NCBI GenBank assembly: GCA_965637545.1
Contig: OZ281497.1
Location: 17,050,001 to 17,114,000 of the forward strand
Source of the DNA: Phallusia mammillata
Lineage: Eukaryota
Direction: 5' to 3'
Length of the DNA stretch: 64,000 nucleotides
A program made the translations under genes and the position numbers. Positions within the stretch are counted from its first letter, which is position 1. Each line of letters begins with the position of its first letter. This document shows, piece by piece, positions 3,001 to 52,198 of the stretch. Under the pieces are notes generated by a model that worked only from the letters and a program-made list of their open reading frames with translations, searched no databases and was not told the DNA's origin.

Positions 3001-4315
3001 TCTCTGCAACAAAATAATAACATGCTTGTAATTTTAGACTTTATGTATAACAGAGTTAAATTTGAGTCAACCTACTTGGTTGCTTTCATTTGACTTTTCT
3101 TCTTCTTTTTGTTTCCAGCCTTCTCTTCCAGTTTTTGCTTGTCTACTCTTGGTTCTATGTCATCAAATGGGTTTGCCAAAACCTATAAATAAGTAAAATG
3201 TAATTGTCAGATCACTGAGTTTGTCACAGTGTTTAAATTCTCGGAAGTTTTTACTCCATATTCACTTCATATTTTTCAAAAATTGAATAATAATCTTTTC
3301 CCCAACATAACAGGTGTTGACGTAAATACATAGCATCTAAATAACTTGCTCATAAGCAGGCACTACCAGCTGGTTTGAAAGGATATTACCTATCATCATT
3401 TATTAAAACACCATTATTCATTTAAAATCACATAAACAAACTGTTAGTTGGAAGTTTGAATATTAAAACTGTCAGCATATAACACAGCATGGTTTCAACT
3501 TGTACCTTGGTCCATTTAATAAATGGAGGGTTAATAGGACGTTCATCACCAGTTGTCCCAACTTCACCAAGTCGAACAAGATTGTAGACTGTATCCCCTG
3601 TTACCTAAAAACAAGTAACAATCTTTTTACAATATTTGAAACACTGTATAAATACATTATGTTTTTGAAATCGTCCACTGAATATTACCTTGCCAAATAT
3701 GGTGTGTTTCTTATTTAAATCATTACATGGGCCAAGGGTGAAAAAGAATTGACTTCCATTATCATCTGGACCTGAATTTGCCATGGCAACAAGACCTCTT
3801 CGAACAAATCGCAACCTTGAGTGAAACTCATCCTGATATAAAACATAGACTGTGTTTACACTGATACACACACAAATACATTCAATCTGCTCAGATTGTA
3901 CCTTAAATGGTTTTCCAAATACAGATTCCCCACCCTGACCAGTACCAGTTGGGTCACCTCCTTGCACACAAAAGTTTGGGACAACTCGATGAAAAATTAC
4001 ATTGTTGTAGTATCCTTGTGAATGACAAATGGGGAATATTAAAATCTTTGACCAGACTGGGGCATCATAATCATAATCAAATTAGAAACAGAAAATGTAA
4101 CTGTCATAAGTTAAATTAGCACTTTTGACAACATTTTGTGATTTTTTATTAGTGCTAAATAACTGTTGTTAATCACCTTCCAAACATAGCTGCACAAAGT
4201 TGCGGCATGCTATTGGTGCTTCTTTTGACCATAGTTCAACATCTATATCACCCATAGAAGTATGAAGTAAAACCTTTCCAAATGTACTTGGTTCTTTAAT
4301 GTAAATGTTACTCAT
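7..4315 (-). CDS. CWC27: Spliceosome-associated cyclophilin CWC27, 14 coding exons, about 513 aa
   Basis: Phase-consistent GT-AG exons: 4177-4315, 3902-4014, 3689-3832, 3506-3604, 3076-3182, 2934-3003, 2449-2574, 2267-2383, 2158-2204, 1973-2109, 1470-1576, 754-899, 274-411, 7-58. Diagnostic peptides: MSNIYIKEPSTFGKVLLHTSMGDIDVELWSKEAP, QGGDPTGTGQGGES, NGSQFFFTLGPCNDLNKKHTIFGK (acidic residue where cyclophilin A has Trp121, as in CWC27), FKLLSFGEEAEEEE, KSKSSHDVLNDPKLS, EELKKESKRL, DRFDISDPRNPLNQRRRE. Confidence 0.95.
995..1275. mobile_element. Non-autonomous hAT MITE (Buster-like) in a CWC27 intron
   Basis: Imperfect TIRs CAGTGGTTCCCAACC ... GGTGGGGAACTACTG, flanked by an exact 8-bp TSD GTTTATGC (987-994 and 1276-1283). 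No coding capacity. Confidence 0.9.
1609..1886. mobile_element. Degenerate hAT-type MITE in a CWC27 intron
   Basis: Right end TTGAGAACCACTG (to 1886) matches the TIR family of the other MITEs. The left end is degenerate and its boundary approximate; no clean TSD. Confidence 0.45.
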
Positions 4316-14400: not shown

Positions 14401-17400
14401 AAAGCGATTAGAATGCATTGTGGCGTCACAACCGGGCATTGAAGCAGCAGCGGCCAAAGCGGCATGGGGGTTTACGGCACCGGCGGAGTTGGACACTAGG
14501 GTTTGCGGCCTGTTGTCATGCCTTCCGCAGGGGTTAAGCGGCTACTAAAACGTCAGTCCAGTAAGATAGGGAAGGCTACAACGAGCACTATAGGGCAGAA
14601 ATTGTTTGGCAGAATCACAAGGGGCGATATATCATTAGCGAAGGGTGCACAAAGCGATGATTGTGCGCCATGAGGGGCAAGACATGATTGGTGGGAGTCG
14701 CCAATTCAGGCGGTGCAGGAATTAAATGTGACCAACGCGTGCATGCCAATTTCAACCCAAGGGCGGTGCTGTATGATGATGATTGCAAAATTCGCCGTTC
14801 CAAATCACTCAAATTTGCCACAGCCTCCATTGCATGAATTAGCGCAAAGTATAGGGTATATTACCCAAGTCAAAAGACCGTTGCGTTTTATGAACTTTGG
14901 TCTATAAAGAGGGTCGTATAGCATGAAGAGACGTTGTTCTTCCCACAATTGACACCCGAAACACACGCACCGCACAGAAATCAACCCGCAGATGATTACC
15001 AGAAAAGCACCAGTCAAAGTCTTGCTAAGTGATTCTTGTTTAAAATGTGCAGTATAAATATTTACATTTTGTTTCCATAAAATTTGAATTTGACTTATAA
15101 AACCAAACAATTGTGTTTGACTGATATCAGACTTGCTATTAGCCAATAATCACACGTTACAGAACAGGGTACTTTTAAGCTCAAGTTAACTTCCTTTAAA
15201 ACAAAACTTGGCGTTTCGTGTGTTTTTGACTGCATCGAATACATTTTCCCAGCTATGCTGCCAAAGCTTACGTAAAAATCAGCATAAAAGCCTACGCAAG
15301 GCAAAAGTTGGCAAACATACACTTATAGGCATGTGTAGCACGGATTCTACTGACTTTGACTGGCGCAAGGCAAAGAAGATAGGAAAATATCACGCTCACC
15401 CACACTCTACACAACAACCCAACACACAGGGCACGCACACCACGAGTCCTACCACAGCGAGGCTGTAGGTTTGGAGAAGCAATTAAGCTTTCAAGGCAAT
15501 CATACACTACACGACGGCACAAAAAACTGTCCGTCCCAAGGCACTACAACATGCGTGCAATGATTATTATAAAGCAAAGGTGGATATAGGTTTACACGCA
15601 AGCCATAAAAGCTGGTGCAAAGCCAAAGCATTAAAAGCATGTTAATCAAGCCAGGCATGATATAAGCAAGCGAATCTGAATTATGTACACTGCATGAACT
15701 GAAATCGAAAAAGCACACTTGCACACAGTTGAAAACCGGGACGGTTTTATTTCTGTGAGTTTTCATCTTGTTTTTCTCCGAACGAACGTTGCCACAACAA
15801 CGCATGGACATAGCTTGAACTTTAACAACTTTGGCACATCGCGAGAACGCTTTGAGAATCAACCAAGCTTATGTACGATAAAGCTAATCATGGATACTTA
15901 AATTACTTTAGGCGATCACTTTAGTTTTGAATAGGCGGAATATACAAGTTTAGCAATATCATAAGGTAAAGCTTAGCAAGCACAATGTTATGACGAGGCG
16001 ACTGTTTGAAAACGCTTGATATAAGCATCAGAAGCTAACGTATTTTCTACTTAAAAAGCAGACGTCTTATATGCAGCAATTCGGCTCAGCGAATAAAGAA
16101 GATTAAAGATTGAATGCTGCACAAATTTCGCTGTACGTTCGCAATGTGTATGCTGAATTAGGCGGCGAAGAATTGAACGCATTCGGATGACAATTGGCGC
16201 CGCAATTACACGGTATGACTGGCGAGGATGAATGAAATAAAACAATGCAAAATGCGCGAACGCCGATTTTCTACACACATGAAAGAACGCAATAAAAACT
16301 TCACCACGCGGGGATCCCCCTAGATAACTACCACCAACGTGCGTCACTGAAGACCGGTGGAGGGCGTACCTGTGGGGATGTTTATCTGGAAGTTGTACTC
16401 CTCGCCTGAAAGCTGGTTGAGCGAGTCCTGGATCTCGACCGGATCCGAACCAGGCGCCAGGCCCAGCTCGAAAGTCGCTATGACACCAGTCGAGAGGAAA
16501 AATACGTTGGATTTGAACGACTTAATGCTGAAGGTCATGACCTTGCCGTGCAGAGGTTCCTGGGCCGCCAACGCCATAACCTATAGAAAACAGGGAATAG
16601 AGTATTTACATAAATGTGGGCACGACCAGTGGCGGTTGTGCGAGCGTCTGAAGTGTAGTTTCTACTTGACTTAAATGGGCTTTGGCGTGGATTGATTGGA
16701 CGAGTACAGCAGAAGCGTATATGGATTTGCGTTGGATTTACTCTTATGAACGACAACATAAATAAGGTATGGTACACAAAACACATTCGGCGAAAGAACT
16801 AGTTAAAGTTGATCATATTAGGTCTGTTGGTCCAGTTTGATAGCACCAGTGGCTTACCTCCGAGCTTATGATGTTGCTGTACTCGGCAAAAAGCTCGGAA
16901 GATGAGTCTTCCAGGTCGGGGGAATAATATGTCCGTTGTCCGTCCACCCGATAGAAGTCAGCTGTGCCGTTGAACATACTGGGTGCTGCAAATAGAAGTG
17001 GATACAAAAGAATGAATACAACAGCACGCGGCTTGTGACGACATTCGAGCAGTGACGACAGCAATGACACACGACAATGCAGTCACGAAAAAAAAGACAA
17101 TGCAGTCACGTGGTAGCAACACTCACCGAGCGAGCGAAACGAAATGGATATTTTCACTTTTATGACGATGACTTTGAAAGTAAAAACAACAATAACTGAT
17201 ATACATTGGAAATGTGAATTGGTGAAACAATAATGTATGGTTTTGGATTTTGAATAAAAAACACATGTATATGTATTTGCAGACATGTAGTTGTAACACA
17301 AGTTGAGTTTGTCACTTGGTTCCGTATTAATAACCAACGAAAGCTAGAAAAAGACAAAAATCTGATGGATTAGTTTAATGGCAAGACAGTACATGAAAAC

Positions 17401-20400: not shown

Positions 20401-23400
20401 ATTTTAGCGGAACAGAAAAGCCAAGAGTAACTTTTCCAAAAATTTAACAAATGTTTTTATGGATACATACTAAAAAATGCTGGTTTTTGTAACAATAGGA
20501 AAAACTACGTGCCAAAAACAGTCGATAAAGCAATGGTTGAAACGCAAAGGACAACATTTTACACAAATTTAAATAAAAGAAGCAGTAATTCACATTCAAA
20601 CACAACAAACCAAAAAATTAAAGGCAACCAACTTTCTTCTACTTACACATGCATCCTGAAATTTGTTTGTTTGCCACAGAAACAAAGTTCCAATAGCCTG
20701 GAAGACAGCGATCACACTTGACTCCGCCCACACCGGGCCGACACACGCACTGACCAGTGGTTTGGTTGCAAGTTGTCTCGTAAGAACCAAACTCGTTGCA
20801 GTTGCATTTCTCTGTGCAATAAATATAAACGGCTTTTATGTCAGGTTTGGAAAATATGAACAAATTCTGTGGCGGTTTTAGACTGTGCTGTATTCTGAGG
20901 GTTGTTTTCAAATGTATTTATACAAGCCTAAATGCACTATATAAGTAAGAACCAGTACTTCGTTTTTAGTGCAGTACTTGTACACAATGCTGCGGTTAAT
21001 GGGAGCAACATACTTTTTTTCTGCCGTAAAAAAAACAAGTTTTAAATACGCAGCAGAATTATAAAATTAACATGTTGTCGGTGCTAGTGTGCCAGCAATG
21101 TCAATTAACTCTAAAACCTTTTAACCGCAACCAAAGCTATTGCAACCTAAAATGTATGAAACCGCGGTTTAATCATAGCAATGCATAGAAGCAGTTGACT
21201 TTAAACTCGTTAAGAAAATAAAGTAGTGTGGTGACTAAGTTATTTATCAATATTCAAACCACATTGGTATTGTGTCTCACACATTTGTTAGAAAAGAGAA
21301 TGAGTTCTAACCTGGACAGCCGGATCGTTGCAAACCTTTGGCCGCTGTCACACCGTCTTCGCAGCAACCATATCTACTGCTCAGACATGCCGCTGTCGAA
21401 CATAAACAGAATCAACATTTTCGCGTAACAAACACATGTAATTTGCAAGCCGCAAACGAGTGAAGTACTCTAGTATTAAATCGGATGAGCAAGACTCGAT
21501 AGACGAGATTTCCTGCGATTTTCAGACGGAATGTTTAACGTAGGTTTGTGGTGGCATACTTTTGACGGGTCGAATTGCGAACAAGTCGATAAATGTGACA
21601 TTAAGTGATTGACGAAAGGTGCGCTGTACCTCTGCACTTAGCAGTGATTGTACTTTAGTTCACAAATGGAAAAGGAGAAAAGGGTTTGAACAAATATCAT
21701 GCCTTTTTCGGTGTGCGAATTTAACAGTTAAAACGGTAAGACAAGTATATTGAGGGGATAGATAGGAAACCAACCTGCACACGAGCCATTGTACACAACC
21801 TTGATAGTCTTCTGTTTCTTGCACTGGGCTTTTATAAGCTCGCACGCATTCGCGTAAGTCTTCCCGTCTGAACCACAAACCTCTCCAGGAGGACTAAAAA
21901 ACATAAAAACCGTGTTTGACAAATATGCACAGTTTAATTGTGGTAAAACTAAAACATACACCAAAGCTTCTCAAAGATTTTACCAAAAATCCTATTTTTT
22001 TTATTGTTTGTTTAAAAAATCAGCTTTTTGTTCCCTTTCCATAATCGATTGTTGGCGCGTACCGACTTACAAAACGCTTAGAAGTAAGCGGTATAGACCA
22101 GGTTGAGAAACCCTGGTCTAAACGCTTTGTAGCAGAGTTGTAAGCAGGCCTGAAATCGAAGCCTGAAAGAACAAGCTCGTTTTAATCATGTCTAAATCAG
22201 CGGTGCTCGGTAACGCGTCATATTCTTACAACTATGGTTTACTACTTTAGGCCAAAACAAAATAAACGAATAGATTTACAGTCACCTGTTAGTACATCTG
22301 ATGTCACATACGCAAGAAGAGTCTTCATCATCAAGCGTCGTCACACACACCGCACCGAAGTTACAATTACAACCGTCGCCTCCAGAACCTTCTCCGCTCG
22401 GGTCATATCGATCTCTGTCATCTGTCGCCAAACACCGAACATTTAAGCGGCGATTTTAACATTACTTGTAAGTTTATGTGATACTCACCGCACGGGCCCA
22501 TGTACTGCATGGTGACTTTGCTTCTACTCTTGCAAGCTGCTACCACGAGTTCGCATTCGTTGTCGTACGTCACACCATCCGTACCACACACAGGGGATAT
22601 GGCAGCGATACACTAAACAATAACACATTGTGTTGAATAAATTTAAGTGATTTTGACAGTTTCCTTGATTAAATCACATTGTTTCTGTTACTCTGGTTTA
22701 TTTTTCTACCTCAAAATCTGCTGAAGCTATCTACCGCTTTCAATATACGTATAGAAACTCTACACCTGCACCTTCACGAAACTAAGATATTTTTTAATTT
22801 ACACTCACTTTTCTTCTTGTCTCATATTCCCATTCTTTCGTCGATTTCTTGACTCATTTCTAATTCACTTCTCCTGTACTTTTTCTCACTTTCTCGTATA
22901 ATTCGTTTCTTATCTCTTGCAAACTCACTCTGTTCTTTGAGATTCTTAGCATGTTTCGTAATATTTTTGTGGTAACATAATACTGTGGGAAACAGGTTGT
23001 GTGTTACTTACCGTTGTGGGACAAACGCACACAGCTCCGTTGTTATTCACTTCGCACTGTTCGCCAGGAGCACACGTCACACCGTCGCATTCGCTCACTG
23101 GAAAAGCAAAAATGAAAGGTCGCAAATTTCTTCCAACCCACCGGTTTTGCATGGATCTGGTAGCTCATGACCATTTCGGCCTTATTGAACCAAGAATTTA
23201 TAAAAAAAACGCTACGATAAAGTATCTTGCTTACCACAAGGTCCATCATGTCGCGCGATGACCAAATTACCAAACGACAAGCAGTTGTGTCGCTGGACTT
23301 CGCATTCGCTTCTGCAAAGTAATGGTCGCGTAAAGAACCGTCTTCTGCGAAACACACACTACAAACAACGTTGAGACAACCCTTACCTGAAGGTTTGTCC

Positions 23401-26400
23401 ATCCACCGTACACACCGGTTTATACACGTCGTTACAAGTAATACATTCACATACTGGGCCGCCGTTAATTACGACGCACGATTGGCCTTCACCACGGCAA
23501 CCACCTTGACTGGCGCATGGGTCTTCAGAATCACCTGTGCAAGTATGTTGTAAAAAATCGGATGAGCGGATCTTTTGTTTCCGAAATGTTTTTTTTACGT
23601 TTTCTATGCTCACCTCTATGAATCCATGGCGTGGCAGTGCGGGAGTTAAGAGTTTATTTTTTACGGTAAGGGGTGAAAAGTGTGAAACGATATCATTGCG
23701 GTAATGATATGGCATGGGGTGAATTTTGCACGGTAAACGCAGAAACAAACGTTACACAATACAACAAACATTTACACAGTTTTTGTTCCTGTACAAGCTG
23801 TATAAACAGCTTACTGCATAAAATAGAAGTTATCTCTGGCAAAATTGTATGTTACGTAAAATACATTCGAACACTGTCAGTTTCCTACAATACTCTACCT
23901 TGACAAACATCCTGGAACGTAAGCTGCGTTTCAGCGTTGCAGGCGAACTTGTGAGCTGCTTGCATGTTTACAAACGTGTGTGTTGCACCTGCCCCGTCCG
24001 TAGCCAGTTTACATGCGTGGGTGACTGGCAGATAGTCAGAGTTTCCAACACCGTTGCACGAACACATTGGCTGGAGTTCGGAGTTACCAATGGTGATCTC
24101 ACATCGCGCGCCGTGACTGCATTGCTCTAGCAGGCAAACATCTGCAAAATAGATGCACAAAAATTAATTCTGCTTGCTTCAGAAGTAGCACATTTGGCCA
24201 CGAAAACGCGTTTACAGGGCAAAACCATTTATCCAATGCAAACAAATACAGGCTTTGATCACACAGAAGAGGTATGAGATCAATACGAGGTGCCATTGAC
24301 AGTGTGCAATTACTGCCCAGAGTTCGAGAGGCAGAGCGACCTCCCACCGCAATTAATCGGTGCCAATAAAACCGCAAGCACACCACACTGAAGGTCCGAC
24401 AGCAACAATTACAAGATATCAAGTTGATACAATGTTGAGGCGCTCGCTTGGCCAATCAAAACTTGTCGAGTGCTTTCATGACATGAGGCAGCCAACGATC
24501 AAAGCGAACTATGCCACAATCGTGAGCGCTGCATTTGGAAAGATCATACAACTCTGGTCACGACCGCTAAAACAACGGGTTAAACTCTAAAGTAAACCGC
24601 GGTCAAAGGCCACATGGATAATGTGATATCGTATAGATAAGCATTATCGGTCGTAGTACCTTCGACGATGAAGTCGTCCATTGGTTCTCGATCCTCAACA
24701 AACGATACATTGCTGTTAAGGACGGCATTGATGATAGCTCCGTTGATTGGGTCGAAAAGTCGTTTGTATATCCAGGCTGTGTTCGAGTCCGGCGGGTCAT
24801 CGCTATTGATCACTAGGGATCGTGTGGACGCGTAAGCTCTGTAACAAAGAGTTTAATCGAGTTTGACATTGTTTTTTTTACAAAAAGGTTTGTTTCAAGA
24901 ATTTAAAATAAAATTTCGTTAATGTTTAATTATCTTACATGTAAAAAATGCAATCACATACAATTAAAGAGTGGAAAAACAAGTAACATACCACAAAAAA
25001 GTGCTATACTACAGCGCGATTATTAAAATTCGATTGATTAAAATGTTGGACTGTTCTAAAAAAGGCCAATATAAAAAAGTAAGGCTTTTTGGCGCTTCAA
25101 AAGTAAAAAAAATTAGAACATTTGTCATGAAAACATGGTTACATTTATGGGAGGAACCACAAGCAGTTGTAAACATCTGTAAAAAATTTTGTACTCACTT
25201 GAAGATCAATACAACACTACCGGGTCTGCTTCCCGTCACAGTAAATTCACCCAACGTCAAAGTCTCAGGCGAGTCGAAGTTTTTGTTTTGCAAATCCTAC
25301 GGTTGGAGGAAAATCCAGTTTTCAACACATATTAACTCCACAACACGATCAAATACAAACCCCATTGACGACAGCTTCCATGTCTTCAACAAACTTCTGG
25401 AATTGCTGAGTTTCCGGATCACAATCACCTGGACACTGGGAATCCGCTTTGATGCCGACAGACCCACGAACCGTTGTCATGACTACAAATTAATACGACA
25501 AAGTTAAACGTTTTTTTGGGATCGCGGCGAATCTGATTTGGCTGACTGGACAAAAATCTCACTTACGTTTTTTTAAAGGACATAAACCAGGTTGTAGGAC
25601 GGACAAACTTCGACCAGTTTTGCACGCGTGTCTGTGGAAAATCATGGTTTAAATACCAATGACCAACGTAGCCAGAGATTTAAGCGGCCCCTAACGTGAA
25701 CTATTTTAAAAAACAAAAACAAAACTTACATTTTAGTAGGTATAATTATAGCACAAATGAGACCAAGTGTGAAGTCGGGTTTCATCCGTTTTAGATCAAG
25801 AAATATATTTTGGCAAGTGTGCGTTTTTTGAGCTTAGTCAAGTTCCACTATTAACCAAATGTTTCCCCATGTATATATATCTAAGGAACACAATACACCA
25901 TACCTTCTAAGTGCACACTCCGAGGCATAGCTGTTCCCGTCATTCCCACAGACAAGTTGTCCGTCATCAGGGCACGGGAATGTGTCGCAACAAACAGGGG
26001 ATCCGTCTTCACCCAGCGAACAAATCCCAGGGCAAGTGTTTTCAAATTCCTGAGAAGTTCCGTTAAAAACTTCGCACGGATCTAAACGAGACAGTGAACC
26101 CGGTAAAAGATACATATGAAGGGGATTTACATATATTTGGCCTTTCAAATATACTGAAACGTAAACGACGCTTTAGCTTATTGGCACACTAAGAATGTAA
26201 CACAGAAAACTAATATGTTTTATCAGAGGAACAGAGGAAAGGTTTCTTGCGGTTTTGTATTTTTTCTTTCATCCCGCTTTTTATTTTGTTTTTAGACACT
26301 GATGATGCTTTTATAGCGAAATGCATTTGTTTTGATAAAACACATAAAATATAGCGACAGATTTAGTGGTTTTCACACTGAATTTTCTTGATGTTTTATC

Positions 26401-29400
26401 AGGTCAAACTAGTGGTTTACGACACGAAAAACAGGTAGGGGCAATATGACTTACTGCACGCCAGTGGTCGAACCACGGTAATCTCGCTTCCCTTCAGACA
26501 AGACGCTCTTCGCAAATCACACTCGGAACGGTAGGAAACCTGGTCGGATCCGCATAGTGGCGTTACCGGGACATCGTTGCACGTCGGACAGACACAAGAT
26601 GGCGTAAGAGTGCTGTCAGGCTGGATGCGAACGACGCACTCGGCCGAGTTTCCGCATTGAACATCAGAACACAGACCTTCGTTTACGACCGGAGCTGCTC
26701 AAACAAAAAAGAAAATGCTTGTTTGCGTGAGTCTTCACGTTGCGCAATAGCTATTCTAAAAATACTCAAAGTGGAATGCGTTGTGTAATGCTAGGAATGA
26801 AAATGTGGGCGATTCCAAGTTATGCCGTTTTAAAGATTAAGCCTGTTGCAGGGAGAAATTATCTTTGAACGAACAACGAAATAGTAAGATCAGGCGCTCA
26901 GTGCGTTCGCAACAGGACTTCTAATGTATACACAACAGTTGCGGCAAAATTAACTACATAGCAATTTCACACATCCCAGAGTCAAACCACTACTGCTAGA
27001 AAAACTTCACAGCATATCACATGCAATTGAAAAGTGATCTAAATATACTATAGTATGGGCAACAATAAGTCAGAAAAAGCTAGGTTTGTAAAGGAAATGA
27101 TTTGCGGCAATCTGTAAAAGCTTAAACTTCGACCGACAGCACAACAACACAGGCATTTAAACTAGAAAATGAAAACATAAAATCTTGGGTATGCAATAAA
27201 AGTTCAAATCTAGATATTAAAGTGATGAATCAAAATTGGGGCGTTGCGTAACAGATAAATGGTGACGTAATATGGATCAAATACAGTCCTACGTGAAACA
27301 TTTATCTACACGTGTTCACGCACTGACGCTAGACATCAATTTCAGTATGAAAGCAAACTAGAGTCCCAGTTTTCTACTACAGGGGCAACAACAAGCATCT
27401 CATATATCCCGGCTCAGAGGTAAGCAAACACAATAGCGCAGTGAACAGGGAATAGGGAAACTTGTTCCCCCTAATTCGCCGCTTAGCATCAGTAGCAGAG
27501 GGCGACCACAACAAAGAGACGCCGCAAACGATGTTTAGGGGCCAACACGGGGGAGTCGACTCGCGCGACTTATAGCAAAGGGAGAAGTGAAAGGGTTCCC
27601 CCTCGTGCAACCCAAAACCTTAGAGAGAAGGCGGGTTTTGGCAACAGGGTTTACACGTGGAGCTGGTGAAAGTACAAACAGGGGCAAGTGGCGTGCTCTG
27701 ACGATGATCTATGTTCTACGATGGGCGTCTTTCGACCGAAACCAACCTGAACGGGTCATTTTAGGCGCCGGATAACGCTGGGGCCTCTTGGGGAGACCGC
27801 AACTGCCAAGTGAACACGAGCGGTACTTTGCAACGGGTTAAGAAAACAAGTCCGCTGCAGCGATTGTGATCTATTAGGCGGAAACTGCAGTTGGGACGAA
27901 TTGCTCCAGTGCGGTAATGCGTTTTTTAAAAGTTCGAACGCGTTTTCATATCGTTAAATTCAGCGACTTTATTATAGATAAGACCATCATTAATTAAGTT
28001 TTGATTGTCACCACAATGAAGAGAATTGACTAAATGCGTCGTCACGTGAATTTACCGGCCAGGAAGTTTAGCCTGGTATTGAATTATTAAAATAACCGAA
28101 CCGACAGTGGTATTTAATAAAGTTCCGGTTATAAGCTTATCAAATATCACTTAAGACGTTCAATAGCGTTATGGCATGGTCAGTTTGACGGCGTAACTTT
28201 TCCGACCCCACAATCGATCGGGGTTAAAGGTCGACCTCGAGCTTACCGGGAGCATGTGTAGGCAACGCCAAAGCGAGCAACGCGTGAAACCCAAGTGAGC
28301 CGGCATCCGTTTTCCAATGCGCCGTAGCGTTTATCACAAGCTGATCGCGACACGCCTGTTAAAGGCAGTGGACTTGCCCTTTCAATAAGGCTTGGCGATC
28401 GCCTTACTGAGGCTGGGTAAAGGGGACTGGGCACAAATCCACTGTTTACCTTAACAAATCCCTACATCCTACCAGGTGGCGAGGCTGACATTGTGGCGGC
28501 GGGAACTTGAGTGAGCGTAAGGGGAATGGCCACTTAATGCAGACGGCGCGCTCTTTACAAGGAGTTCAATATGGTTGAACTGTGAAGAGGCCACTTTGGA
28601 CAAGACATCCCAATATAGGGGCTGGACATTGCTAAGTACTCTGAGCTGATTGGCGGTTACGGGAAAATCCATCAAAGGGCAATACCAGAAAGTGTATTGC
28701 GTGTTAATATGTACGCTGGGAGTATACGACTTGCTCCTAAAGAGCGATAAATACGTAGCCAAAAATTTGAAACTTTGACACAACACAACATAGGGCTTAC
28801 AGTTTACATGCGTTGCGGTGACTTGTTGAAACGTAAGCAATAATTTTCAAGGAGCGGTTTCTGTCCGAGAAAGTAATAGCGGTCAGTGATAGGGGCGTGA
28901 CCCGATCTCTGTCTCATCGTAATTAAAGTACACCTAAGCCTGAGTTTAACTACAATTAGATGTTTTCAGCGAATCGAGAGGTCGCGCCCGAATCACTGCC
29001 CGCTACTTTGTACATCCCTAAACGGCGGTTTAGTGGAGACTTAAGGGAAGTTTTTGACAGTTTCGCATGTACAGTTATACAGTAGTGTCTGTTTCGTTCT
29101 GAAAATCAGGCTAAAGAGTATATGTATGTCGGGGTGTTTTTAAGTAACCGTCAAGCTATTATTTACTCGAACCTAATAACTCAAACTTAAAACATGTATT
29201 TTAGGAGCAAGACTAATTAAACCATGGCAATCAGTCAAAAAAGGTCAACCAATCAAGCGCGACTTGCTTTACACGTGACCACTGACGTAATCCAGAGCGT
29301 GGGAAAGGTCATGCAAGCTTCCCGATGGTAACTACAGCTATCATCAATTATAATCGAATTTAGGCTTAAAACCGAAGTAGCAACGCCATATGCTTCTTGA

Positions 29401-32400
29401 TGTTCCTTGGGGTCTGTAGTGGTTTTATTGTTTGGATGGTGATTAGAGGTCGTTTGAAGTTTTATTGGATTTCAGCTAAATCCTATAAACGCACACTTGA
29501 TTTTATTTGCCCTCTAATTACACTGGTCAGATCCGATGGGCTTTGCCAAGGAATGTCAACAACAGGACATTTTTAAACAGTGTTTTAGTGGAAGAACACT
29601 TACTGTCAAGGTTTAATGGAAATATTTCGCATGGTGTTTGTTAAGTAAATGTTCTTCACCACTGCTATTTTAAGTCACATCAGCTCTCAGCAGCATATGA
29701 GTAACAGCCACTGACCCATATTTAACATAATTATCACAAAAATACGAAGCTACGTTCATTTAAATGCATTGGCAGAAACGCTCATTAAACACATAGGAAT
29801 TATTGGCAGGTGAACTCCCTTTACTGTTGCGCTTTTAAATCATGATCTTTCTCGTGAGTAATTGCCCAATTGCCCTTGGGAAAACGCCGGTTTTCATCTG
29901 CGACAGTTATTAAACGATAGCGAAATACCACATCACTGGTTATAGTGGTCCCAAGGTGCAAGTATAGGGTTTCCGCGCAAATTGGTTTGCAAATCTACTC
30001 AATTCGATAAACAAAGACCGCTATTGTATTAAATGTCCACTGGGACGCCTGTCATGGGTCGCCAAGTAAAATTGATTTGGTTAGAGTTGAAAAGAAAAGC
30101 TCTGACACAATGAGCCTAAAGGTCCACACTTAGTTGGGGATGTGAATATTTCGATTTCAAATTAAATATCTCAAAATTATTGTTCACCTTTTGTGGATCA
30201 AACAGTCGTATCTACTCTACCACACATAACACACCAACAACTACGTGTTGACACCAGCAACAAAAAAATGAAAAAGCAACCAAACTACTTAAGCAACAAC
30301 AGCACACAACTATTTGCTGCGAATTTCTGCAGATAAGTAGCAGCTCTGTGCCTACATAAAGCCATACCTAACACAATCACAAAACACCACTACAATGGCC
30401 GCTACATGGCCTGACATACCATCAACGTCAACGACAGGTAGTACAGTACGAGGTCTAGTTATGATGGTTGTTGTTGTTATTGCTGCAAACGAAATAATGA
30501 TAAATGAAACAGAAAGCTGAAAGCATGACATTTATGATGAATGGTAACGGAAAATGATCAGGGTTGTTAATGCAATTCAGGTAAACGACAGAACCAAAAT
30601 GTAAAATGAAACCTGAATTAAGAAAAATGTTCGCAACCATTACAAATTACAATAAAATGCTGTTTTCAATAGTACCGCTTCTACTTAAACGAGAAATTTC
30701 TTCCTATGTTGCTGACCTTGATGCTGCCCTTCCTAACTGTTTTATTTAGTCTTCACGCAGGTTCATTTCAAACGTGGGATTTGAAATTTGGGTGTAGACA
30801 AACAACATAAACTATATGTATATATTGTAGTTTAGACTTCCGTGTCGTATGGACAAATGACAACAGGGGTTCTAAGTCAGTTAAGTGCTTAAGGTGAATT
30901 AAAGCGAGTTATATATGTTATGATGAAAACCACGTAACTAGGCGGAATACTATTTTACATGTCAGTCTTTATTTCAACGACGCACCAAAACGCGTGTTTC
31001 AGTCAAATATGCGCTTGAAAAACTCGTCTAACGATTGTCCGTCCCAATAACGCCAACACAAAGGCCTCAGCAGGATCCTTTCAAAAGCGCCCGATCTTAC
31101 AGAGGCGGACAAAGGAGGTGGAACGCGCAATACATGGAAGCTTATCAGGGTTGTTACGTGTGAAAGTGGCCGCTGTGCGCAACACTACACCGACGTTTCT
31201 AAAGATCCCTGCATGTTACAGGAAATCACTGTGTTCAATACGAAGTGTAGAGTTGACGGGTAAACGCTCGGAACACGGAACTAGTTCAAGAGGTTGGTGT
31301 CGTGGACAAACACACTCAAGAACTCAGGTGCTTTTGAACTTGCCCGCTTGTCGCCTAACGTGCAGCAAACCATGAAGCATAAGGGTTACACGCGTGCGCT
31401 CCACTGCTTATGTGATTTTAGGAAAGCCCTTTTGTGGCAAGCTAGGCCGCAGTGGTTGTGTTGGAATACACAGATATGTTTGAATAGGCTGATTGTGCGC
31501 AAGTCACTGTAGCGAAGTTTAAGGTATTTAAGCTTATTAGGTAATACGCTAAATAGAATCTTCTTGTGGTAAAATCAAATCTCTCAAAGCTCTATAACAC
31601 GTCTACTGTCCAAGCAACAACATCCTTCAGACACTTTCTAATTGGTTAGCCTTGAATTACCGCCAAAAGATTGCTTAAGTAAAGTCATTGTTGGCCTTAC
31701 AATCAAGTTTAAAACGACCTAAAGAGTGCGCTGTGTTCTTTGAAACCAGCGTTGGGGACAAATAAAACACCAACGTTTTCTTACCGCAGGGTTTCTCCTC
31801 GGCGATGCGAATGCGCCGTTGGGCCATGCACTGTGCAGCCTTTAACCTGCATTCATTTGGATAGGTGATTCCGTCTGATCCACAAAGCGGCGCAAAGAGT
31901 TCATCCTCTTCTGTGCCCGATGAGCAGGAAAGATCAGGACATAAGCAAGTCGCATTTCCATCCTTAGCAACCTGACAGCTTGCACCGTACCCGCATAGCA
32001 CATTCATACATGGGTCTGTAAAAAAACACTGTATTAGTTGTGGCATGTACATGTTGGAATGTAAGGATTTTAACATGAATGGTTGCATTGGTTTTTATGG
32101 GAACGCAGCACACAATGGATAAACCGTGAGAAATATGTTGCGCATCTGAAGTGTTGGGGCTGCGGGCTGCTTACGCCTGATTTCCAAGCGTTGGATTCAA
32201 GAGTCAAGCGTGGGTAATTTCAAACCACAAATCCCGGTTTACTATGGGTTAGATATGTCGCAGCCAAAAAGCACAAGGACCCGGTTGTTCAGAGACCCAA
32301 GGTAAAATTTGATGCATTGGAAATAATAGCTAAACACTTGGGAGGCAAGAACGCCACAATCGGCCCATAACGGTATCTGGTATAAAATTTCATTGTTAAA

Positions 32401-47400: not shown

Positions 47401-50400
47401 AAATGTACTTTAAAATGTGGACAGGCGAATATAAGTAACCCGGATATGCGTTGCTGGGTAACTTACTGAAGGCAACGACCCTTAGGATACATACAGAGTC
47501 GAGCTTTGTGGTTTCATGTTCAAGTGCAAGTGTTTCGATGCGCTCCGAGTAGCACCCCACACGACGAAGTCAGTATTATCACACGCCTGTATGCCAAACA
47601 ATACCCCGTAGCCCACGGGAACTGGTCAGAGCAAAAATCGTGGTAAAATTGGTGGCAGTTATTAAAATTGCGGTTCCTTATTGGAATTGGCGTTTATTAA
47701 CCACCTCGGTTGATATAGCGTTTTTTGATTTCGTGCCTACTGTTATGGCGGGCGCTGTCATTGCGCAGACACAACATTCATGCGCCATGTGATTAGCAGT
47801 CCATTTTATCGAAATAAATAGTCTGGCGAAGTTTGCAAATGCCACAGAACAACGAGGCACAGCAAAAAACCGTTTTGATAAGCACAGAGTGGAACTCCGG
47901 CGGATGGACAGGAAACCTTAGCTGGCATTCCAAACTTCCCGCGCACTAAAACTCCTTCTTCCTGCTCTTTAGACTAGACGCAAGTCAGGTCTTGCAGTAG
48001 GAAAAGATCGAAACAAAAAGTGAATTGTTTGCAATCGCAAGAAGCCGCAGCCATAAAATAATCGAAGCTCATATCACCTTAACACCCGTTTGGCTCTGCG
48101 TGCCGACCGCAAATCGTCGTGGATTGCACTGGCGGTAAGCTAAAGAAGCAACAGAAGCGCTAGGAATTCGGGATGAGCCCTCATGAGACAAAGCGTTAAC
48201 CCCAGCTCAAGTGAGGAACGGTCGCGCGTGGCGCAATTTAACGCCCAACATATCCATTCAAGGCAAATCGTCGTGACCGCGATGGCCGTGTTGCGCTCCG
48301 TATAAGAACCAACACAATGGTTATGGATTATAGCATCTGATGTCGGAGCATATACCATAAGTAGGGAAAAAGTTCAGTTGCCCCTTATCTGTATGTTGGA
48401 TCTGTACACACGACAATACGCCACGACCGCATGCGACGATATCTTCACGGTCGTTGTAAATGCGAGCGTTGGTAAAAGTGCTGGGTTCCTTCGATTTTGG
48501 ACAGAAACGCGACAAAATGTGTAAAGAAATGCGTTTGCCTGTAGGCTTAAATTGGCAAAGTATAATTTCATTACCAAGCGATACAGATAAAAAGTCAATT
48601 CATACGTCCAATATACGATTGTAAAAAACATTTAACGTCTTAAACTCAAGTCCATTACGAAAGGCTGGCAATAATCCCTCGAAGTCGATTGTATTTACAT
48701 ACACGAGTAAAAGTCGGCAATAAGCTCTCCAAAAGGCAAGCGCGTTAACAAGCCAAACGACCCAGCTCAAGCGATTAACAAGTACAGGCCGAAAGTGGCT
48801 TTTAATAAACCGCCACAAATCTATTACTTTACGAGCATTCGCAATGTGCTGCTGGTTGGTCAGAGTTGTTCGACCACCGGCATAAATACCTTAACGAGCA
48901 CCGTCACGGCAATGCCCGCTTCCGCAAAGATCACGAAGCAGCGACCAGTCGTAACTTTCGACAAACTGCCGCCACGTTTTTAGTCCCTCGGGCGCAGGTC
49001 GGATTCGCTTCGTTTAATGGTCACTTTGCGTATGCCGCCTGAAATTACTGTGTTCGTCGATAACGCAACGCATGGCTGGCAAAGATAAACTTTTCCGAGG
49101 TGCGTATTTGGTCATGTTTCGACTTGCTAAGGCGGTAAAAACCGTTTCACCACTCATGCTTTGTTCTCTCCGAATATTAAATACGAAAATTTAAAGCTTT
49201 GTGTGCAATACCCAAACACAAATAAAAGGATATTTTACACAGTAAAAACACTAATACGTCAGAAGTTTTTTTAAAAGGTTTCCAATACAGGTAGGAAATT
49301 GGAAATGATAAGCTGTAAACATCATAACGCAATCCTCAAGCGGTTGAGCCCAATGATGACCTGGCGTTGAGCCAACTATTCGGGCAGTGCAGAAAAGGCC
49401 ATATTTTTCGTAGCAATGCTGGTATTGGTAGCGGAGGTAGGACTAACCGTGCATGAACAGTGGATAGTTGTTGACATACCTGGAGTGCCTTTTATCGACA
49501 CACACAGGCGTGCGCGCTGGGGGCCAGTGAAAAGATCGTGACATTTAATAAAGGCGTGCAAGTCGAACTGCGCTAGTCATCAGCCCGGCGAAACAGGGGT
49601 CTGAATATTTAGGGCGATTTTGTTGGCTTGGAAAGATATAGTGTCCTTGCAGGTGACACTCAACGGGTGTCGACGGCGTAAGAATGGCTACGCGACGCGA
49701 TGAGCGTGTACGAAACGTCAGGAAGCCCAGCGACCGTGGGTCAGACAAGCCGGAAACCAAGAAACACGGCGCATCATAAAATGCACCAGAGGCCTTGATC
49801 AGCGCTCATGACGAAAAACGCACAGGTGTGCTCTGTGGGCGACTGACGAAATGCGCGGCCGCACGCGGGACTTGTACGCTCCGACAACGGCCTTTCTCTG
49901 TCGCTTAACTCGATGTTTTAGCCAAAATTTCAAGATCGGGTTACTGTCGCGCGCGTTGTTCTCAGGGGCAAAACATTACACACATGAGTCATGAGAAAGC
50001 GATTACACTAACGCTGGCTGACCTTCAATGACGGCTTGCGTGTTCTCCAAGTTGGTCAGCGTTATGTGAACCACTGAAGCTGAAAGCACCAGCCTGTTGT
50101 TTATGCGATTGACGAAAAATATTCTTGTGTCCTCTTTGTTTACCTGGTTGTAAATGTTCAAACGTTTAGGATTAATGGCAAGAATACATATTTTTCTGCA
50201 TTGTTTATACTTGTTGAACATATTGTTTTGAAATTGTCTACACAAGCCTACTATGAAAAACAGTGTAATGGAAAACACACCATGAAGTTGTAATTATATG
50301 ACATCCTTGTTTTTAAAACAAAAAGTCATTTAAATATTGTTTGCACTTACATCTGAATCGCAGTACATAATATTTCCAAGACCATAGATGTTCACAAATT

Positions 50401-51042
50401 TTTGCTTGTACACAAGACCCATGGCACCATGCTGCTTTGAGGTTATTAGATCTTGGGCAAACTTTTGGCCTTTCATTATTCTCCAGATCTGAAAATGATG
50501 TTTAATGCAATGTTTGTTGACACAACTCACAAGAGAAGTGTGTTATGGTTACACTGGTAGCCAATTATAAGCGAGTTTGTATAATTGGAGCACAAATCAG
50601 ATTTAAGATGACCATTGTTGACAAACAAATAATCTCTAAATCCCCATTTAATTGGTCAACAAATGCAACCCAATTATAGACAGACAGTCCAAATTATACA
50701 AAACACTCTGTTGTATGGCTTTGAATTCATACTAAAACTGTTAAAAAATACCTGGACTGAGCATTTGTATGATCCTGCTTTTTTGCCATCACATTTTTCC
50801 ACTGTTGCCGTTAGAATTAATTTCGAAGTTGCATTTTTTTCTATGGTAGTTTGATCCAAACAGTTGGTAGCTCGCTTTCCAGGCATGGACAACATTACAC
50901 CTCTTGCAAACCGTCCTGCATCCACTCCCAATGACAGATGAGCAATACATAGTACAATAATGGCAAGTGATTTTATTGCAAAAAAATTCTTGGATAAATC
51001 CCATAATGTACAGAAATGTAGATTTATGTTTCGACAAGTCAT
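6517..51042 (-). CDS. AGRN: Agrin (secreted NtA form), 44 core coding exons, about 2089 aa
   Basis: Core exons 5' to 3', all phases compatible and the total divisible by 3: 50752-51042, 50351-50488, 50023-50143, 32415-32450, 31785-32015, 26455-26694, 25904-26081, 25567-25631, 25361-25482, 25199-25296, 24660-24838, 23899-24141, 23387-23534, 23235-23311, 23012-23097, 22489-22612, 22286-22421, 21775-21893, 21312-21392, 20647-20811, 20206-20358, 19834-19964, 18869-18974, 18112-18501, 17694-17776, 17516-17591, 16858-16985, 16370-16580, 13291-13329, 12714-12897, 12267-12375, 12072-12181, 11656-11781, 11388-11509, 11163-11315, 10640-10774, 10316-10439, 10101-10212, 9380-9496, 8813-8999, 8365-8473, 7127-7351, 6945-7048, 6517-6674. 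The NtA (DTRIFFV), FS, [9 protein letters not shown], laminin-EGF, SEA, LG and EGF order is agrin-specific. The start ATG at 51042 is tentative. Confidence 0.95.
7689..7866 (-). promoter_or_regulatory. Dispersed YCAY cluster downstream of z microexon 2
   Basis: 9 YCAY tetramers in about 180 nt of intron in transcript sense. Confidence 0.5.
7908..7922 (-). CDS. AGRN: Candidate agrin z/B-site microexon 2 (15 nt, AFTP plus split codon)
   Basis: gtttttgcag/GGCCTTCACTCCAAT/gtaaga; phase 2-2, in frame, no stop; lies between the NAVKEK and SRATRH exons. Confidence 0.8.
8043..8069 (-). promoter_or_regulatory. YCAY cluster (putative Nova splicing enhancer) just downstream of z microexon 1
   Basis: Transcript sense TTCATGCCATCAGTCGCTCATCATTCATCA contains 5 YCAY in about 27 nt, directly after the donor. 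Confidence 0.65.
8078..8104 (-). CDS. AGRN: Candidate agrin z/B-site microexon 1 (27 nt, ESKNNFIP plus split codon)
   Basis: ttttttcttgccacccgcaag/AGAGAGCAAAAACAATTTTATTCCAAT/gtaagt; phase 2-2, in frame; encodes N-N-F-I-P, compared with N-E-I-P in vertebrate z8. Confidence 0.85.
8813..12897 (-). CDS. AGRN: Agrin LG1-EGF-EGF-LG2-EGF exons
   Basis: IPQFGGASYAEF ... FDTGSG ... GLNLDSNVYIGG ... GLTGCV; CGSSPCFPSKC; DPCIAHQCHLSSTC; MPAFAEDSYLQF ... GLIFYN ... YDLGQG ... LNVDQPLYLGGVPD; ACYHKPCENGGTCYPRKAEFTCLC. Confidence 0.92.
9604..9627 (-). CDS. AGRN: Candidate agrin y/A-site microexon (24 nt, RKWYMKHW)
   Basis: tttttcacgctag/CGCAAATGGTATATGAAGCATTGG/gtaagt; phase 0-0; inserts between QGTSP and NLHSELNV, the position of vertebrate KSRK. 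Confidence 0.7.
9974..9988 (-). CDS. AGRN: Weaker second y-site microexon candidate (15 nt, DRGHP)
   Basis: cttaag/GATAGGGGACATCCG/gtaatc; phase 0-0 and in frame, but the polypyrimidine tract is poor. Confidence 0.3.
13971..14075 (-). CDS. AGRN: Candidate cassette exon after SEA (105 nt, GQENLLVHDWPFPPLDGAEDLRDGYSMSIPDFKRV)
   Basis: ttggttccgccag acceptor and GTAAGT donor; phase 1-1 matches both neighbours; no stop. Confidence 0.6.
16370..16985 (-). CDS. AGRN: Agrin canonical SEA domain (2 exons)
   Basis: MFNGTADFYRVDGQRTYYSPDLEDSSSELFAEYSNIISSE resembles the vertebrate agrin SEA start; no GSVV cleavage motif. Confidence 0.85.
17516..18501 (-). CDS. AGRN: Agrin Ser/Thr/Pro-rich mucin-like region with Ser-Gly GAG attachment cluster
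   Basis: TTTPKPEPEQTTTQTTT ... low complexity, followed by GSGCMGDDEDGCKEGSGGDEE (SG next to acidic residues). Confidence 0.85.
18869..24141 (-). CDS. AGRN: Agrin FS4-FS7, laminin-EGF 1-2 and FS8 exons; first SG/GAG site (SGEGSGGDG)
   Basis: [108 protein letters not shown]. Confidence 0.92.
22099..22115. mobile_element. Minimal hAT remnant (CAG plus one TIR)
   Basis: GTATAGAC / CAGGTTGAGAAACCCTG / GTCTAAAC: a TIR-like end between near-identical 8-mers (6 of 8 match). Confidence 0.35.
24660..25482 (-). CDS. AGRN: Extra SEA domain within the follistatin array (3 exons)
   Basis: Exons 25361-25482, 25199-25296 and 24660-24838 bridge FS3 and FS4 in phase (1-0, 0-2, 2-1). They encode MTTVRGSVGIK ... 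CDPETQQFQKFVEDMEAVVN ... FTVTGSRPGSVVLIFKAY ... WIYKRLFDPINGAII. Confidence 0.8.
25567..32450 (-). CDS. AGRN: Agrin linker and FS1-FS3 exons
   Basis: GKSIVEPPKKKP/DPCMNVLCGYGASC ... LCGSDGITYPNECRL; LCGSDQVSYRSECDL; VCGNDGNSYASECAL. Confidence 0.92.
28469..28840 (-). mobile_element. Possible decayed LINE (L2/Rex-like) ORF2 C-terminal fragment
   Basis: QSFKFLATYLS ... HINT ... LYWDVLSKVASSQFNHIELLVKSA resembles the FKFLG ... HIN ... LQRVVKTA region of LINE RT thumb domains. Recognised by eye only. Confidence 0.35.
30420..30482 (-). CDS. AGRN: Candidate 63-nt cassette exon between FS1 and FS2 (AITTTTIITRPRTVLPVVDVD)
   Basis: tttcgtttgcag acceptor and G/GTATGT donor; phase 1-1; no stop; Thr-rich. 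Confidence 0.65.
30495..30557 (-). promoter_or_regulatory. YCAY cluster upstream of the 63-nt exon (putative Nova silencer position)
   Basis: 7 YCAY tetramers in about 63 nt immediately 5' of the acceptor in transcript sense. Confidence 0.5.
31060..31560 (+). mobile_element. Possible decayed Penelope-like element RT N-terminal fragment
   Basis: ILSKAPDLTEADKGGGT ... HYTDVSKDPC resembles the PLE ADKG and Y..L..DPT motifs; interrupted by stops. Confidence 0.3.
50023..51042 (-). CDS. AGRN: Agrin signal peptide and NtA domain (3 exons)
   Basis: LAIIVLCIAHLSLGVDA signal-like segment; NCLDQTTIEK ... LILTATVEK ... YKCSVQIWRIMKG ... IYGLGNIMYCDSDV ... EDTRIFFV ... ITLTNLE. Confidence 0.9.
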
Positions 51043-52198
51043 TGTGCTTTTTGCAACCTTGTCTCAAATGTTTAGTTCCAATATATTTGACTGCTAATCC
51101 ACAACAGCCCTTTGTGCTTGTAGAACACTCTTGTTGAGTTATTCCATTTCAAAAACAGCAAGAAAATAATTTGTATACAGCACCCTAAAGTCAACAAAAT
51201 TCTGGTAATAGTCACAAGACAGTTTGAAGTATAACCACAAATCCACAATGCTATTGATAACATGTTTAGCTGTCATATAGAGACATGTTCTGTGAACTTC
51301 CTTAACATATTAATCTTTCCAGTTTTATTACATTATATACTTATTACTGATGTTATGTATACATAAGTCCTTTACATGGAGCAAACGTTGAATTGCTGTA
51401 CGCTTCTTAAACTATAGGCGCCTTCAGTATGAATTCTACTTCATCTAATGTGTGCAACTGTGCACCACACAAAAACTAACAATCTTAACCTTCCAAATCT
51501 TTTTACATATCTCGGTTTCATCTGTAGCCAGGTTCCACTTTAAAACGTCAAGTTACCAGTAAATAGGAGACACTGTTTCAATCAACAACATACGTCAGCG
51601 CTAACAACCGCTCACATACCTCGACGTTTTCTCCCTCTCTGCTAACATTACGAAGGGCAAAGGCCCGCGACTACTCAACGGTTGGCTGCAGGCCGTGGAA
51701 ACTAAACGTTAAAACTGTTTGGTGTCTACCCTTCTGGCGCAAAAGCACGGTACAGTCTTTTAGTGTCTTCTAGCGGCGATAGTTTTGTGCGCTTGTGGTG
51801 GTTTCTGCATTTACTCAGTAGCTCATTTTCCCGCGCAATGATAACCCACAACATATTGTTTTAATTCACAAGCAAAAGTATCGATGATGTCGTCCTGATT
51901 CCTATTTCCATGCAGACAGATTTCCAATTATTTTCTTTCAACGAGTTGACATAAAACAAGTCCAAGATTTCGTCGCACACCTTAATTTACAGAATGAACA
52001 TTTTTCTTTTTTAACGACTAAACTTGCCTCGACAAACTTATCTCTGGCTCACCAAGTTCTCTGTTATGGAGCCTGAGGAGTAAGCTTCGTATAACGCTAC
52101 ATGCAGGTTACCTAAGACTAGAATGGGACTACTTATCGAAACGTAATTTATAGTTAAGTTACATCGACGCAATGTTTATTTTTGCAATATGTGATGAC

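What the first reader, a model, noticed from the sequence alone, without database searches (positions are those of the whole stretch)
24660..25482. A second SEA domain with an intact G/SVV autoproteolysis motif inserted in agrin's follistatin array
Seen: three phase-compatible exons between FS3 and FS4 encode about 135 aa with a SEA pattern, including TGSRPGSVVLIF (GSVV at 25210-25221). Only 7 FS modules precede the laminin-EGFs, versus 8 in vertebrates. Known: MUC1-type SEA domains self-cleave at G/SVVV and act as non-covalent mechanical break points, while the single SEA of vertebrate agrin lacks this motif, as does the canonical SEA here. Inference: this agrin may self-cleave, separating the laminin-binding NtA anchor from the signalling C-terminal part, a protease-independent or force-dependent release mechanism I do not know from any agrin.
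Basis: partly seen in the sequence, partly recalled or inferred. Interest (0 to 1): 0.8.

Follow-up and report, generated by a model that had tools for sequence, protein, structure and literature searches.

The report
Unassigned 133-residue module in tunicate agrin
Three expressed exons insert a conserved 133-residue domain with a MUC1-like G-S-V-V site into the follistatin array of a sea-squirt-type agrin. It may be a hidden self-cleaving SEA domain, but no sequence test confirms this and the fold could not be modelled here.

Summary
On the minus strand, exons 25482-25361, 25296-25199 and 24838-24660 (399 nt, phase 1-1, GT..AG) encode 133 aa, with GSVV at 25221-25210. Transcript contigs from four studies splice them between FS3 and FS4; no skipping form was seen.

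The gene is an agrin: NtA, Kazal/FS, two laminin-EGF, a canonical SEA and LamG. It most resembles Ciona agrin.

The module is not unique to this genome. The same 133 aa, without indels and about 40% identical, occur in a second species (L001) and in the published Ciona intestinalis agrin. A 2010 paper listed that stretch as 'unassigned by Pfam'. R65, G67 and S68 are invariant, but the following residues differ: SVVL here, SSVL in L001, SAIL in Ciona.

The SEA assignment is unproven:
- Pfam SEA does not hit the window or the Ciona module.
- PDB profile searches find nothing.
- Comparison with the gene's own SEA gives nothing.

Support is limited to the motif, its mid-domain position, the domain size, the exon phases and a crude strand-helix-strand-strand-helix-strand pattern.

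My estimates are about 0.6 for a SEA-like fold and about 0.35-0.4 for self-cleavage. Earlier scan notes cover other parts of this gene, not this module.

The parts
25361..25482 (-). Module exon A (122 nt, enters in phase 1). It encodes residues 1-41: a predicted first strand (VRGSVxI), an invariant CPG[DN]C loop and an amphipathic helix (DP..QF..F...VN).
   Evidence: Splice joints 25482|25567 and 25360|25295 in transcript contigs of 4 runs. Translation. 55% identity to L001 and 48% to Ciona.
25199..25296 (-). Module exon B (98 nt). It encodes residues 42-74(part): a loop, a predicted second strand, and the R-P-G-S-V-V-L-I-F hairpin.
   Evidence: Joints 25295/6|25360 and 24838|25199. Translation. 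Orthologous exons have the same size.
25210..25221 (-). Codons for G67-S68-V69-V70. The putative scissile bond lies between G (25221-25219) and S (25218-25216).
   Evidence: Sequence read directly. G67 and S68, together with R65, are invariant in the window, L001 and Ciona.
24660..24838 (-). Module exon C (179 nt, leaves in phase 1). It encodes residues 74-133: the rest of the third strand, a helix around W96...RL, the terminal strand(s) and the invariant P.DDF..E end.
   Evidence: Joints 24838|25199 and 24141|24660. It is homologous to P0003 on L001.
25567..26081 (-). FS3, in two exons (26081-25904 and 25631-25567), directly upstream of the module. The linker after its last Cys is only about 4 residues.
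   Evidence: Pfam Kazal_2 E=2.8e-7 on the first exon. Splice joints.
23897..24141 (-). 'FS4': an 81-aa Cys-rich module directly downstream of the module. It is a divergent follistatin-like domain with an invariant LPVTHACK motif.
   Evidence: Spliced directly to exon C. There is no Kazal hit in Pfam. It is conserved in L001, L002 and Ciona. The AlphaFold model has pLDDT 46.5 and is uninformative.
16370..16985 (-). Canonical agrin SEA domain, in two predicted exons (16985-16858 and 16580-16370; 113 codons, phase 1-1). It lacks a G-S-V-V site.
   Evidence: Weak Pfam SEA hit on exon 1 (E=0.21). It closely resembles the Ciona agrin SEA printed in Fig. S6 of PMC2874008. Translation. These splice sites are predicted and were not covered by reads.
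50006..51063 (-). NtA (laminin-binding) domain exons of the same gene. This is the part that self-cleavage in the module would separate from the rest of the protein.
   Evidence: Pfam NtA E=7.2e-6 and 2.9e-8 on two exon ORFs.

Best explanation
The three exons encode a compact 133-residue globular module that is a fixed, constitutively spliced part of tunicate-type agrin. It sits with almost no linker between FS3 and a divergent FS4.

The most likely reading is a highly divergent SEA-like (ferredoxin-type beta-alpha-beta-beta-alpha-beta) domain. Its beta2-beta3 hairpin would carry the invariant R-x-G-S turn. In this species the turn reads RPG|SVVL, which matches the self-cleaving class (GSVVV, GSVIV, GSVIA, GSIVA).

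On that reading the domain would cleave itself between G67 and S68 during folding, by an N-to-O acyl shift driven by hairpin strain. Agrin would then be a non-covalent two-chain molecule. One chain would be NtA-FS1-3 plus half of the module; the other would be the second half plus FS4 through LG3. The shared sheet would hold them together, and only unfolding force could separate them.

Shown: the exons, their expression, conservation, motif, and domain size and position. Inferred: the fold, the cleavage and the mechanical role.

The stated confidence is for the whole chain, SEA-like fold plus self-cleavage. The fold alone I put at about 0.6.
For: - Exons and splicing are confirmed in transcript contigs of 4 studies.
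- The module is exactly 133 aa with no indel in three lineages that are about 40% identical to each other. Forty positions are invariant, including R65, G67 and S68.
- L001 has identical exon sizes (122/98/179 nt) and phases.
- The motif RPGSVVL sits at residue 67 of 133, in mid-domain. By crude propensity and hydrophobic-moment analysis it lies between a predicted strand and a buried hydrophobic strand. The overall order is strand-helix-strand-[GS]-strand-helix-strand.
- GS[VI][VI] is expected only about 0.013 times per 133 aa.
- Published self-cleaving motifs tolerate variation at the fifth position.
- SEA folds are known to be conserved despite low sequence conservation, and have been missed by sequence methods until a structure was solved, as for GPR126 and Notch.
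- The module is phase 1-1, like the gene's canonical SEA.
Against: - Pfam SEA (PF01390) gives no hit at E<=10 for the full window module or for the Ciona module.
- PDB phmmer and profile searches give nothing.
- hhalign and shuffle-controlled global alignment against the gene's own SEA show no signal (z between -1.2 and 0).
- A library-wide HMMER search (1.84 billion representative proteins) with exon C found only one real relative and no SEA protein.
- The two orthologues have S or A at position +2 (GSSVL, GSAIL), outside the published GS[VI][VI] rule.
- 30% of all positions are invariant, so conservation of G and S is only mildly significant.
- The secondary-structure evidence is crude.
- No structure model and no protein-level data exist.
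Confidence: 0.38

Rival explanations
1. The module has a SEA-like fold but does not cleave. It would be a structural spacer or glycosylation-guiding module, like the canonical SEA of agrin. The G-S would be kept only because a tight turn needs Gly and a small residue.
For: The orthologues carry GSSVL and GSAIL, which deviate from the 'GSxxV, x = V or I' rule quoted in PMC9478142. Many SEA domains, including agrin's own, do not self-cleave. Cleavage depends on hairpin strain, not on the motif alone.
Against: The window species has the full G-S-V-V, preceded by R-P as in MUC1. Ser, the nucleophile, is invariant in three lineages at 40% identity, although a turn could accept other small residues.
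Confidence: 0.22
2. The module is a lineage-specific domain of some other fold, or a fold not yet described, and the GSVV tetrapeptide is a coincidence. The module would act as a rigid insert or a binding surface within the FS array.
For: Every homology test run here was negative: Pfam, PDB, the gene's own SEA, the ESM Atlas feature search with exon C, and protein word and library-wide searches. PMC2874008 also left the region unassigned. The strict motif is present in only one of three species.
Against: The motif lies where a SEA hairpin would be, in a domain of SEA size, with a compatible strand/helix order, in a protein family that already uses SEA. R-x-G-S is invariant. The chance expectation of the motif is about 1%.
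Confidence: 0.35
3. The exons are an annotation or reading artefact: non-coding sequence, a pseudo-exon, or a cassette that is normally skipped.
For: None found. Contigs cannot exclude a minor skipping isoform, and the module is phase 1-1, so skipping would keep the reading frame.
Against: Spliced contigs from 4 independent studies include all three exons at exact GT..AG borders in one open frame. Orthologous exons with identical sizes exist in L001, and the segment is part of the Ciona agrin protein.
Confidence: 0.02

Closest known systems
Self-cleaving SEA domains of MUC1 type (MUC1, MUC3/12/13/17, enteropeptidase, matriptase, ADGRF1/F5, IMPG SEA-2)
   Same: Domain size is about 120-130 aa. 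It is an extracellular mosaic-protein module flanked by phase-1 introns. A G-S site followed by a hydrophobic strand lies in mid-domain, and in this species it reads RPGSVV, identical to MUC1's RPGSVV. The predicted order is strand-helix-strand-strand-helix-strand. The proposed consequence is two chains held non-covalently and separable by force.
   Different: There is no detectable sequence-profile similarity. An invariant CPG[DN]C loop follows the first strand. The fifth motif residue is L, and the orthologues have S or A at +2. The module sits in a secreted basement-membrane proteoglycan between Kazal-type modules, not next to a membrane or mucin region. Cleavage is untested.
Canonical SEA domain of agrin (vertebrate and Ciona; also present in this gene at 16985-16370)
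   Same: It lies in the same protein, is also a phase 1-1 module, and has a phase-0 intron close to the end of the first helix. Its size is similar (113 vs 133 aa).
   Different: It is a different position in the protein, after FS8 and the S/T-rich region. It has no G-S-V-V. There is no measurable sequence similarity to the module. The canonical domain is at least weakly seen by Pfam SEA, while the module is not.
Cryptic SEA-like domains found only by structure (GPR126/ADGRG6 'unknown region', Notch NRR, dystroglycan)
   Same: These were unassigned stretches in multidomain extracellular proteins that sequence profiles missed. Proteolysis occurs in the beta2-beta3 loop, and the fragments stay associated.
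   Different: Most of those are cut by furin or metalloproteases rather than by themselves. For the agrin module no structure exists yet, so the parallel is a precedent and not evidence.
'Region unassigned by Pfam' 431-677 of Ciona intestinalis agrin (XP_002123658.1; Banyai, Patthy and colleagues 2010, PMC2874008)
   Same: This is the orthologous segment: a 133-aa module plus the divergent FS4, with the same length, the same flanks and invariant R-x-G-S.
   Different: The Ciona motif is RQG-SAIL. The paper did not interpret the region and counted it neither as FS nor as SEA.

Membership tests
SEA domain (Pfam PF01390) | Significant match to the SEA profile HMM | tested here: not met
   hmmscan of the full 133-aa window module and of the Ciona module at E<=10 gave no SEA row. 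Single exons also gave none. As a control, exon 1 of the gene's canonical SEA alone gives a weak SEA hit (E=0.21).
SEA domain (fold level) | About 110-130 aa alpha/beta sandwich with beta-alpha-beta-beta-alpha-beta order | tested here: inconclusive
   The length of 133 aa is invariant in 3 species. Averaged Chou-Fasman and hydrophobic-moment profiles give strand 3-11, helix 26-38, strand 54-63, strand 69-75, helix about 96-102 and strands 108-122. This is crude. AlphaFold could not be run on the spliced peptide.
SEA domain (fold level) | Structural superposition on solved SEA domains (e.g. MUC1 2ACM) | not testable with these tools
   Structure prediction accepts only sequences found exactly in the window, in fetched loci or in protein searches. 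No contiguous copy of the module could be fetched.
Self-cleaving SEA subclass | G|S[VI][VI]x motif in the beta2-beta3 hairpin | tested here: inconclusive
   The window has GSVVL, which fits the first four positions. L001 has GSSVL and Ciona GSAIL, which do not fit at +2. The hairpin location is inferred only.
Self-cleaving SEA subclass | Demonstrated cleavage between Gly and Ser, with the fragments remaining associated | not testable with these tools
   This needs protein expression or proteomics.
Agrin orthologue | NtA, then an FS/Kazal array, two laminin-EGF, FS, an S/T-rich region, SEA, and EGF/LamG modules in this order | tested here: met
   Pfam gives NtA, Kazal_2, EGF_laminin twice and Laminin_G. 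The S/T-rich exon is at 18580-18032. The gene is collinear with, and close in sequence to, the Ciona agrin of PMC2874008.

The most novel reading that the evidence does not exclude
Tunicate agrin contains a cryptic, sequence-undetectable SEA-type autoproteolytic domain inside its follistatin array. The mature protein would then be a non-covalent heterodimer. Its laminin anchor (NtA-FS1-3) could be torn from the dystroglycan- and receptor-binding part by mechanical load, without any protease. That would be a built-in mechanical fuse in a basement-membrane linker, at the place where vertebrates rely on MMP cleavage.
Probability: 0.3. Interest if true: 0.7.

Novelty: new variant of a known kind. 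Interest (0 to 1): 0.5.

Why it matters
Agrin links laminin in the basal lamina to dystroglycan and signalling receptors. In vertebrates its release and inactivation depend on outside proteases: neurotrypsin, and the MMPs described in PMC3439447.

A self-cleaving, force-separable domain between the laminin anchor and the rest of the molecule would be a different way to regulate a matrix linker. It would also extend SEA-type mechanical break points from membrane mucins and receptors to a secreted proteoglycan.

It would explain a conserved stretch of Ciona agrin that has stood unassigned since 2010. It would show that one FS position of the chordate agrin array is occupied by a different module in tunicates.

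If the fold turns out not to be SEA, the module is still a conserved orphan domain of a well-studied protein.

Tried and rejected
- Pfam on single exons gave no relevant hit, as did Pfam on the full module and on the Ciona module.
- PDB sequence searches found nothing: with the module profile, with exon B alone, and with the three-species profile.
- The library-wide HMMER search with exon C returned three hits. Two are bacterial Ig-repeat or subtilase proteins and were rejected as chance. One is real (P0003).
- Word searches with exon C, the module profile and FS4 returned only P0003, P0004 and P0005.
- The JGI metagenome scan found no relative.
- The ESM Atlas feature search with exon C gave scores of 0.86 or less, with no SEA.
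- hhalign and shuffle-controlled alignment against the canonical SEA gave nothing.
I did not send that peptide to any other tool afterwards.
- The AlphaFold model of FS4 had pLDDT 46.5 and was not used.
- I tried to fetch a cDNA contig through ORFs in the 3'UTR, but they are not on record.
- L002 does not reach the module.
- I considered typing published SEA alignments for an offline profile.

Full report
**What is there.**
The finding lies on the minus strand. Reading the sequence gives three exons with AG/GT borders:
- A, 25482-25361 (122 nt)
- B, 25296-25199 (98 nt)
- C, 24838-24660 (179 nt)

Together they are 399 nt, or 133 codons, entering and leaving in phase 1. The peptide contains TGSRPGSVVLIF, and GSVV is encoded at 25221-25210.

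**Expression.**
The look-up of sequencing runs listed about twenty small contig sets that hold roughly 29% of the sampled words of 23300-26800. That share matches the exonic fraction. Read laying on 22200-27000, with four runs from four studies, showed contigs that join the exons in this order:
- FS2, 26695-26455
- FS3a, 26081-25904
- FS3b, 25631-25567
- A, B and C
- FS4, 24141-23897
- 23532-23387, 23311-23235, 23097-23012, 22612-22489 and 22421-22286

Every skipped part begins CT and ends AC on the + strand. The joined sequence is one open frame of 565 aa. No contig skips the module. Contigs drop rare variants, so a minor skipping isoform, which would stay in frame, is not excluded.

**The gene.**
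Pfam on exon ORFs gives these domains:
- NtA at about 51063-50006
- Kazal_2 for FS1, FS2, FS3, FS6, FS7 and FS8
- two EGF_laminin exons and Laminin_G
- a weak SEA hit on the first exon of the canonical SEA (E=0.21)

An S/T-rich exon lies at 18580-18032. This is an agrin.

The supplement of Banyai, Patthy and colleagues (PMC2874008) prints Ciona agrin domains. FS1, both laminin-EGFs and the canonical SEA of the window closely resemble the Ciona ones. The resemblance includes a hairpin-region insertion in the canonical SEA that vertebrate agrins lack. The window therefore most likely comes from a tunicate. This is an inference, because organism names are coded.

Seven Cys-rich FS-type modules precede the laminin-EGFs. 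'FS4' is divergent: it has no Kazal hit, and an AlphaFold model from three sequences had pLDDT 46.5.

**The module is conserved.**
The library-wide HMMER search with exon C returned one real relative, P0003, a 64-aa ORF. The two other hits are bacterial repeat proteins. P0003 lies on a 4-kb Logan contig, L001. That contig is collinear with the window: FS1, FS2, FS3, module, FS4. Its module exons are 122, 98 and 179 nt, the same sizes and phases as here. The peptide is 133 aa, 40% identical, with no indel.

Table S1 of PMC2874008 prints the corrected Ciona intestinalis agrin. The same 133-aa module sits there between FS3 and FS4. The paper lists residues 431-677 as 'Region unassigned by Pfam' and counts seven FS domains in total. 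The module aligns without a gap in all but one place.

An ungapped three-way comparison gives about 40% identity for every pair and 40 invariant positions. These include:
- V5, R6, G7, S8
- C17, P18, G19, C21, D22
- F28, F31
- R65, G67, S68
- W96, R100, L101
- P126, D128, D129, F130 and E133

A fourth contig, L002, is from a close relative. It covers FS4-FS6 only and stops short of the module.

**Is it a SEA domain?**
Every homology test I could run was negative.
- Pfam SEA gives no row at E<=10 for the window module or the Ciona module.
- PDB searches with the profile or with exon B give nothing relevant.
- hhalign against the gene's own SEA gives probability 0.1%.
- Global alignment scores are no better than shuffles, with z between -1.2 and 0.
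- The ESM Atlas feature search with exon C is uninformative.
The spliced peptide is not an exact stretch of the window, and I could not obtain a contiguous copy.

What speaks for SEA is indirect.
- The hexapeptide RPGSVV equals that of MUC1. This comparison rests on my own knowledge of the MUC1 sequence.
- G-S sits at residue 67 of 133.
- Averaged propensities and hydrophobic moments give strand, helix, strand, [G-S], buried strand, helix, strand(s).
- The module is phase 1-1, like the canonical SEA.
- Chance expectation of GS[VI][VI] is about 0.013 per 133 aa.

The literature shows that the SEA fold is conserved despite low sequence conservation (PMC6586460). It also shows that a SEA domain in GPR126 was an 'unknown region' until a crystal structure was solved (PMC6954182). 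A negative profile search therefore lowers the SEA reading but does not exclude it.

**Is the cleavage motif intact?**
Published self-cleaving motifs are:
- GSVVV, GSVIV and GSVIA (PMC2958558)
- GSVVV or GSIVA
- 'GSxxV, with x = V or I' (PMC9478142)

The window's GSVVL fits the first four positions. L001 (GSSVL) and Ciona (GSAIL) do not fit at +2. Only R-x-G-S and the hydrophobic strand after it are invariant. Cleavage is driven mainly by hairpin strain (PMC10556640), which cannot be judged from sequence.

**Mechanism and odds.**
I estimate these probabilities:
- about 0.6 that the module has a SEA-like fold
- about 0.35-0.4 that it also cleaves itself in this species
- about 0.22 that it is SEA-like but uncleaved
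- about 0.35 that it is an unrelated fold

If it cleaves, agrin would be a two-chain molecule, split between the laminin-binding NtA-FS1-3 part and the rest, and held together by the shared sheet. In vertebrates, detaching agrin from laminin is the work of MMPs (PMC3439447).

**Novelty.**
The segment itself is not new sequence, because it is in a published Ciona protein. I found no paper that interprets it. The SEA/autoproteolysis reading is new but unproven.

Earlier notes of this scan on the same window concern z- and y-site microexons, not this module. Another note reports a SEA-like domain with a furin site elsewhere in the same genome.

Noticed in passing
window 23897-24141 (-): 'FS4' is an atypical follistatin-like module. 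It is Cys-rich with an invariant LPVTHACK...DG motif in four species. Pfam Kazal models do not recognise it, and its AlphaFold model has low confidence (pLDDT 46.5). Between the window and the close relative L002 it is only about 59-64% identical, while FS6 is about 97% identical. It therefore evolves much faster than its neighbours.
   Followed up: partly
window 26260-26392 (intron between FS2 and FS3a): Runs X1 and X17 each hold a separate short contig (362 nt in X17) over this intronic stretch, with 3 mismatches and 2 one-base insertions. It looks like a transcribed repeat or a paralogous copy rather than part of the agrin mRNA.
   Followed up: no
window 16370-16580 (-): The canonical agrin SEA has a hairpin-region insertion (…FKSNVFFLSTGVIATFEL…). 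Ciona agrin shares it (…FRSASIFWGGVIVTFEL…), and it is absent from the vertebrate agrin SEAs aligned in Fig. S6 of PMC2874008. This is a tunicate-type signature.
   Followed up: partly
window 32094-50006 (-): The intron between the last NtA exon and FS1 is about 18 kb, far longer than the other introns of the gene (60-500 nt in the FS array). Its content was not examined. In vertebrates the alternative TM-agrin first exon lies in the equivalent interval.
   Followed up: no
window 3608-4399 (-): Exons of a cyclophilin-type peptidyl-prolyl isomerase (…MGDIDVELW… / …FHRVVPNFCVQGGDPTGTG…) lie downstream of agrin on the same strand. I identified them by eye from the translation only.
   Followed up: no
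L001 2260-2836: In the second species, FS2 and FS3 are each encoded without the internal introns seen in the window, and all introns are about 55-65 nt. The three-exon structure of the module is nevertheless preserved exactly.
   Followed up: partly
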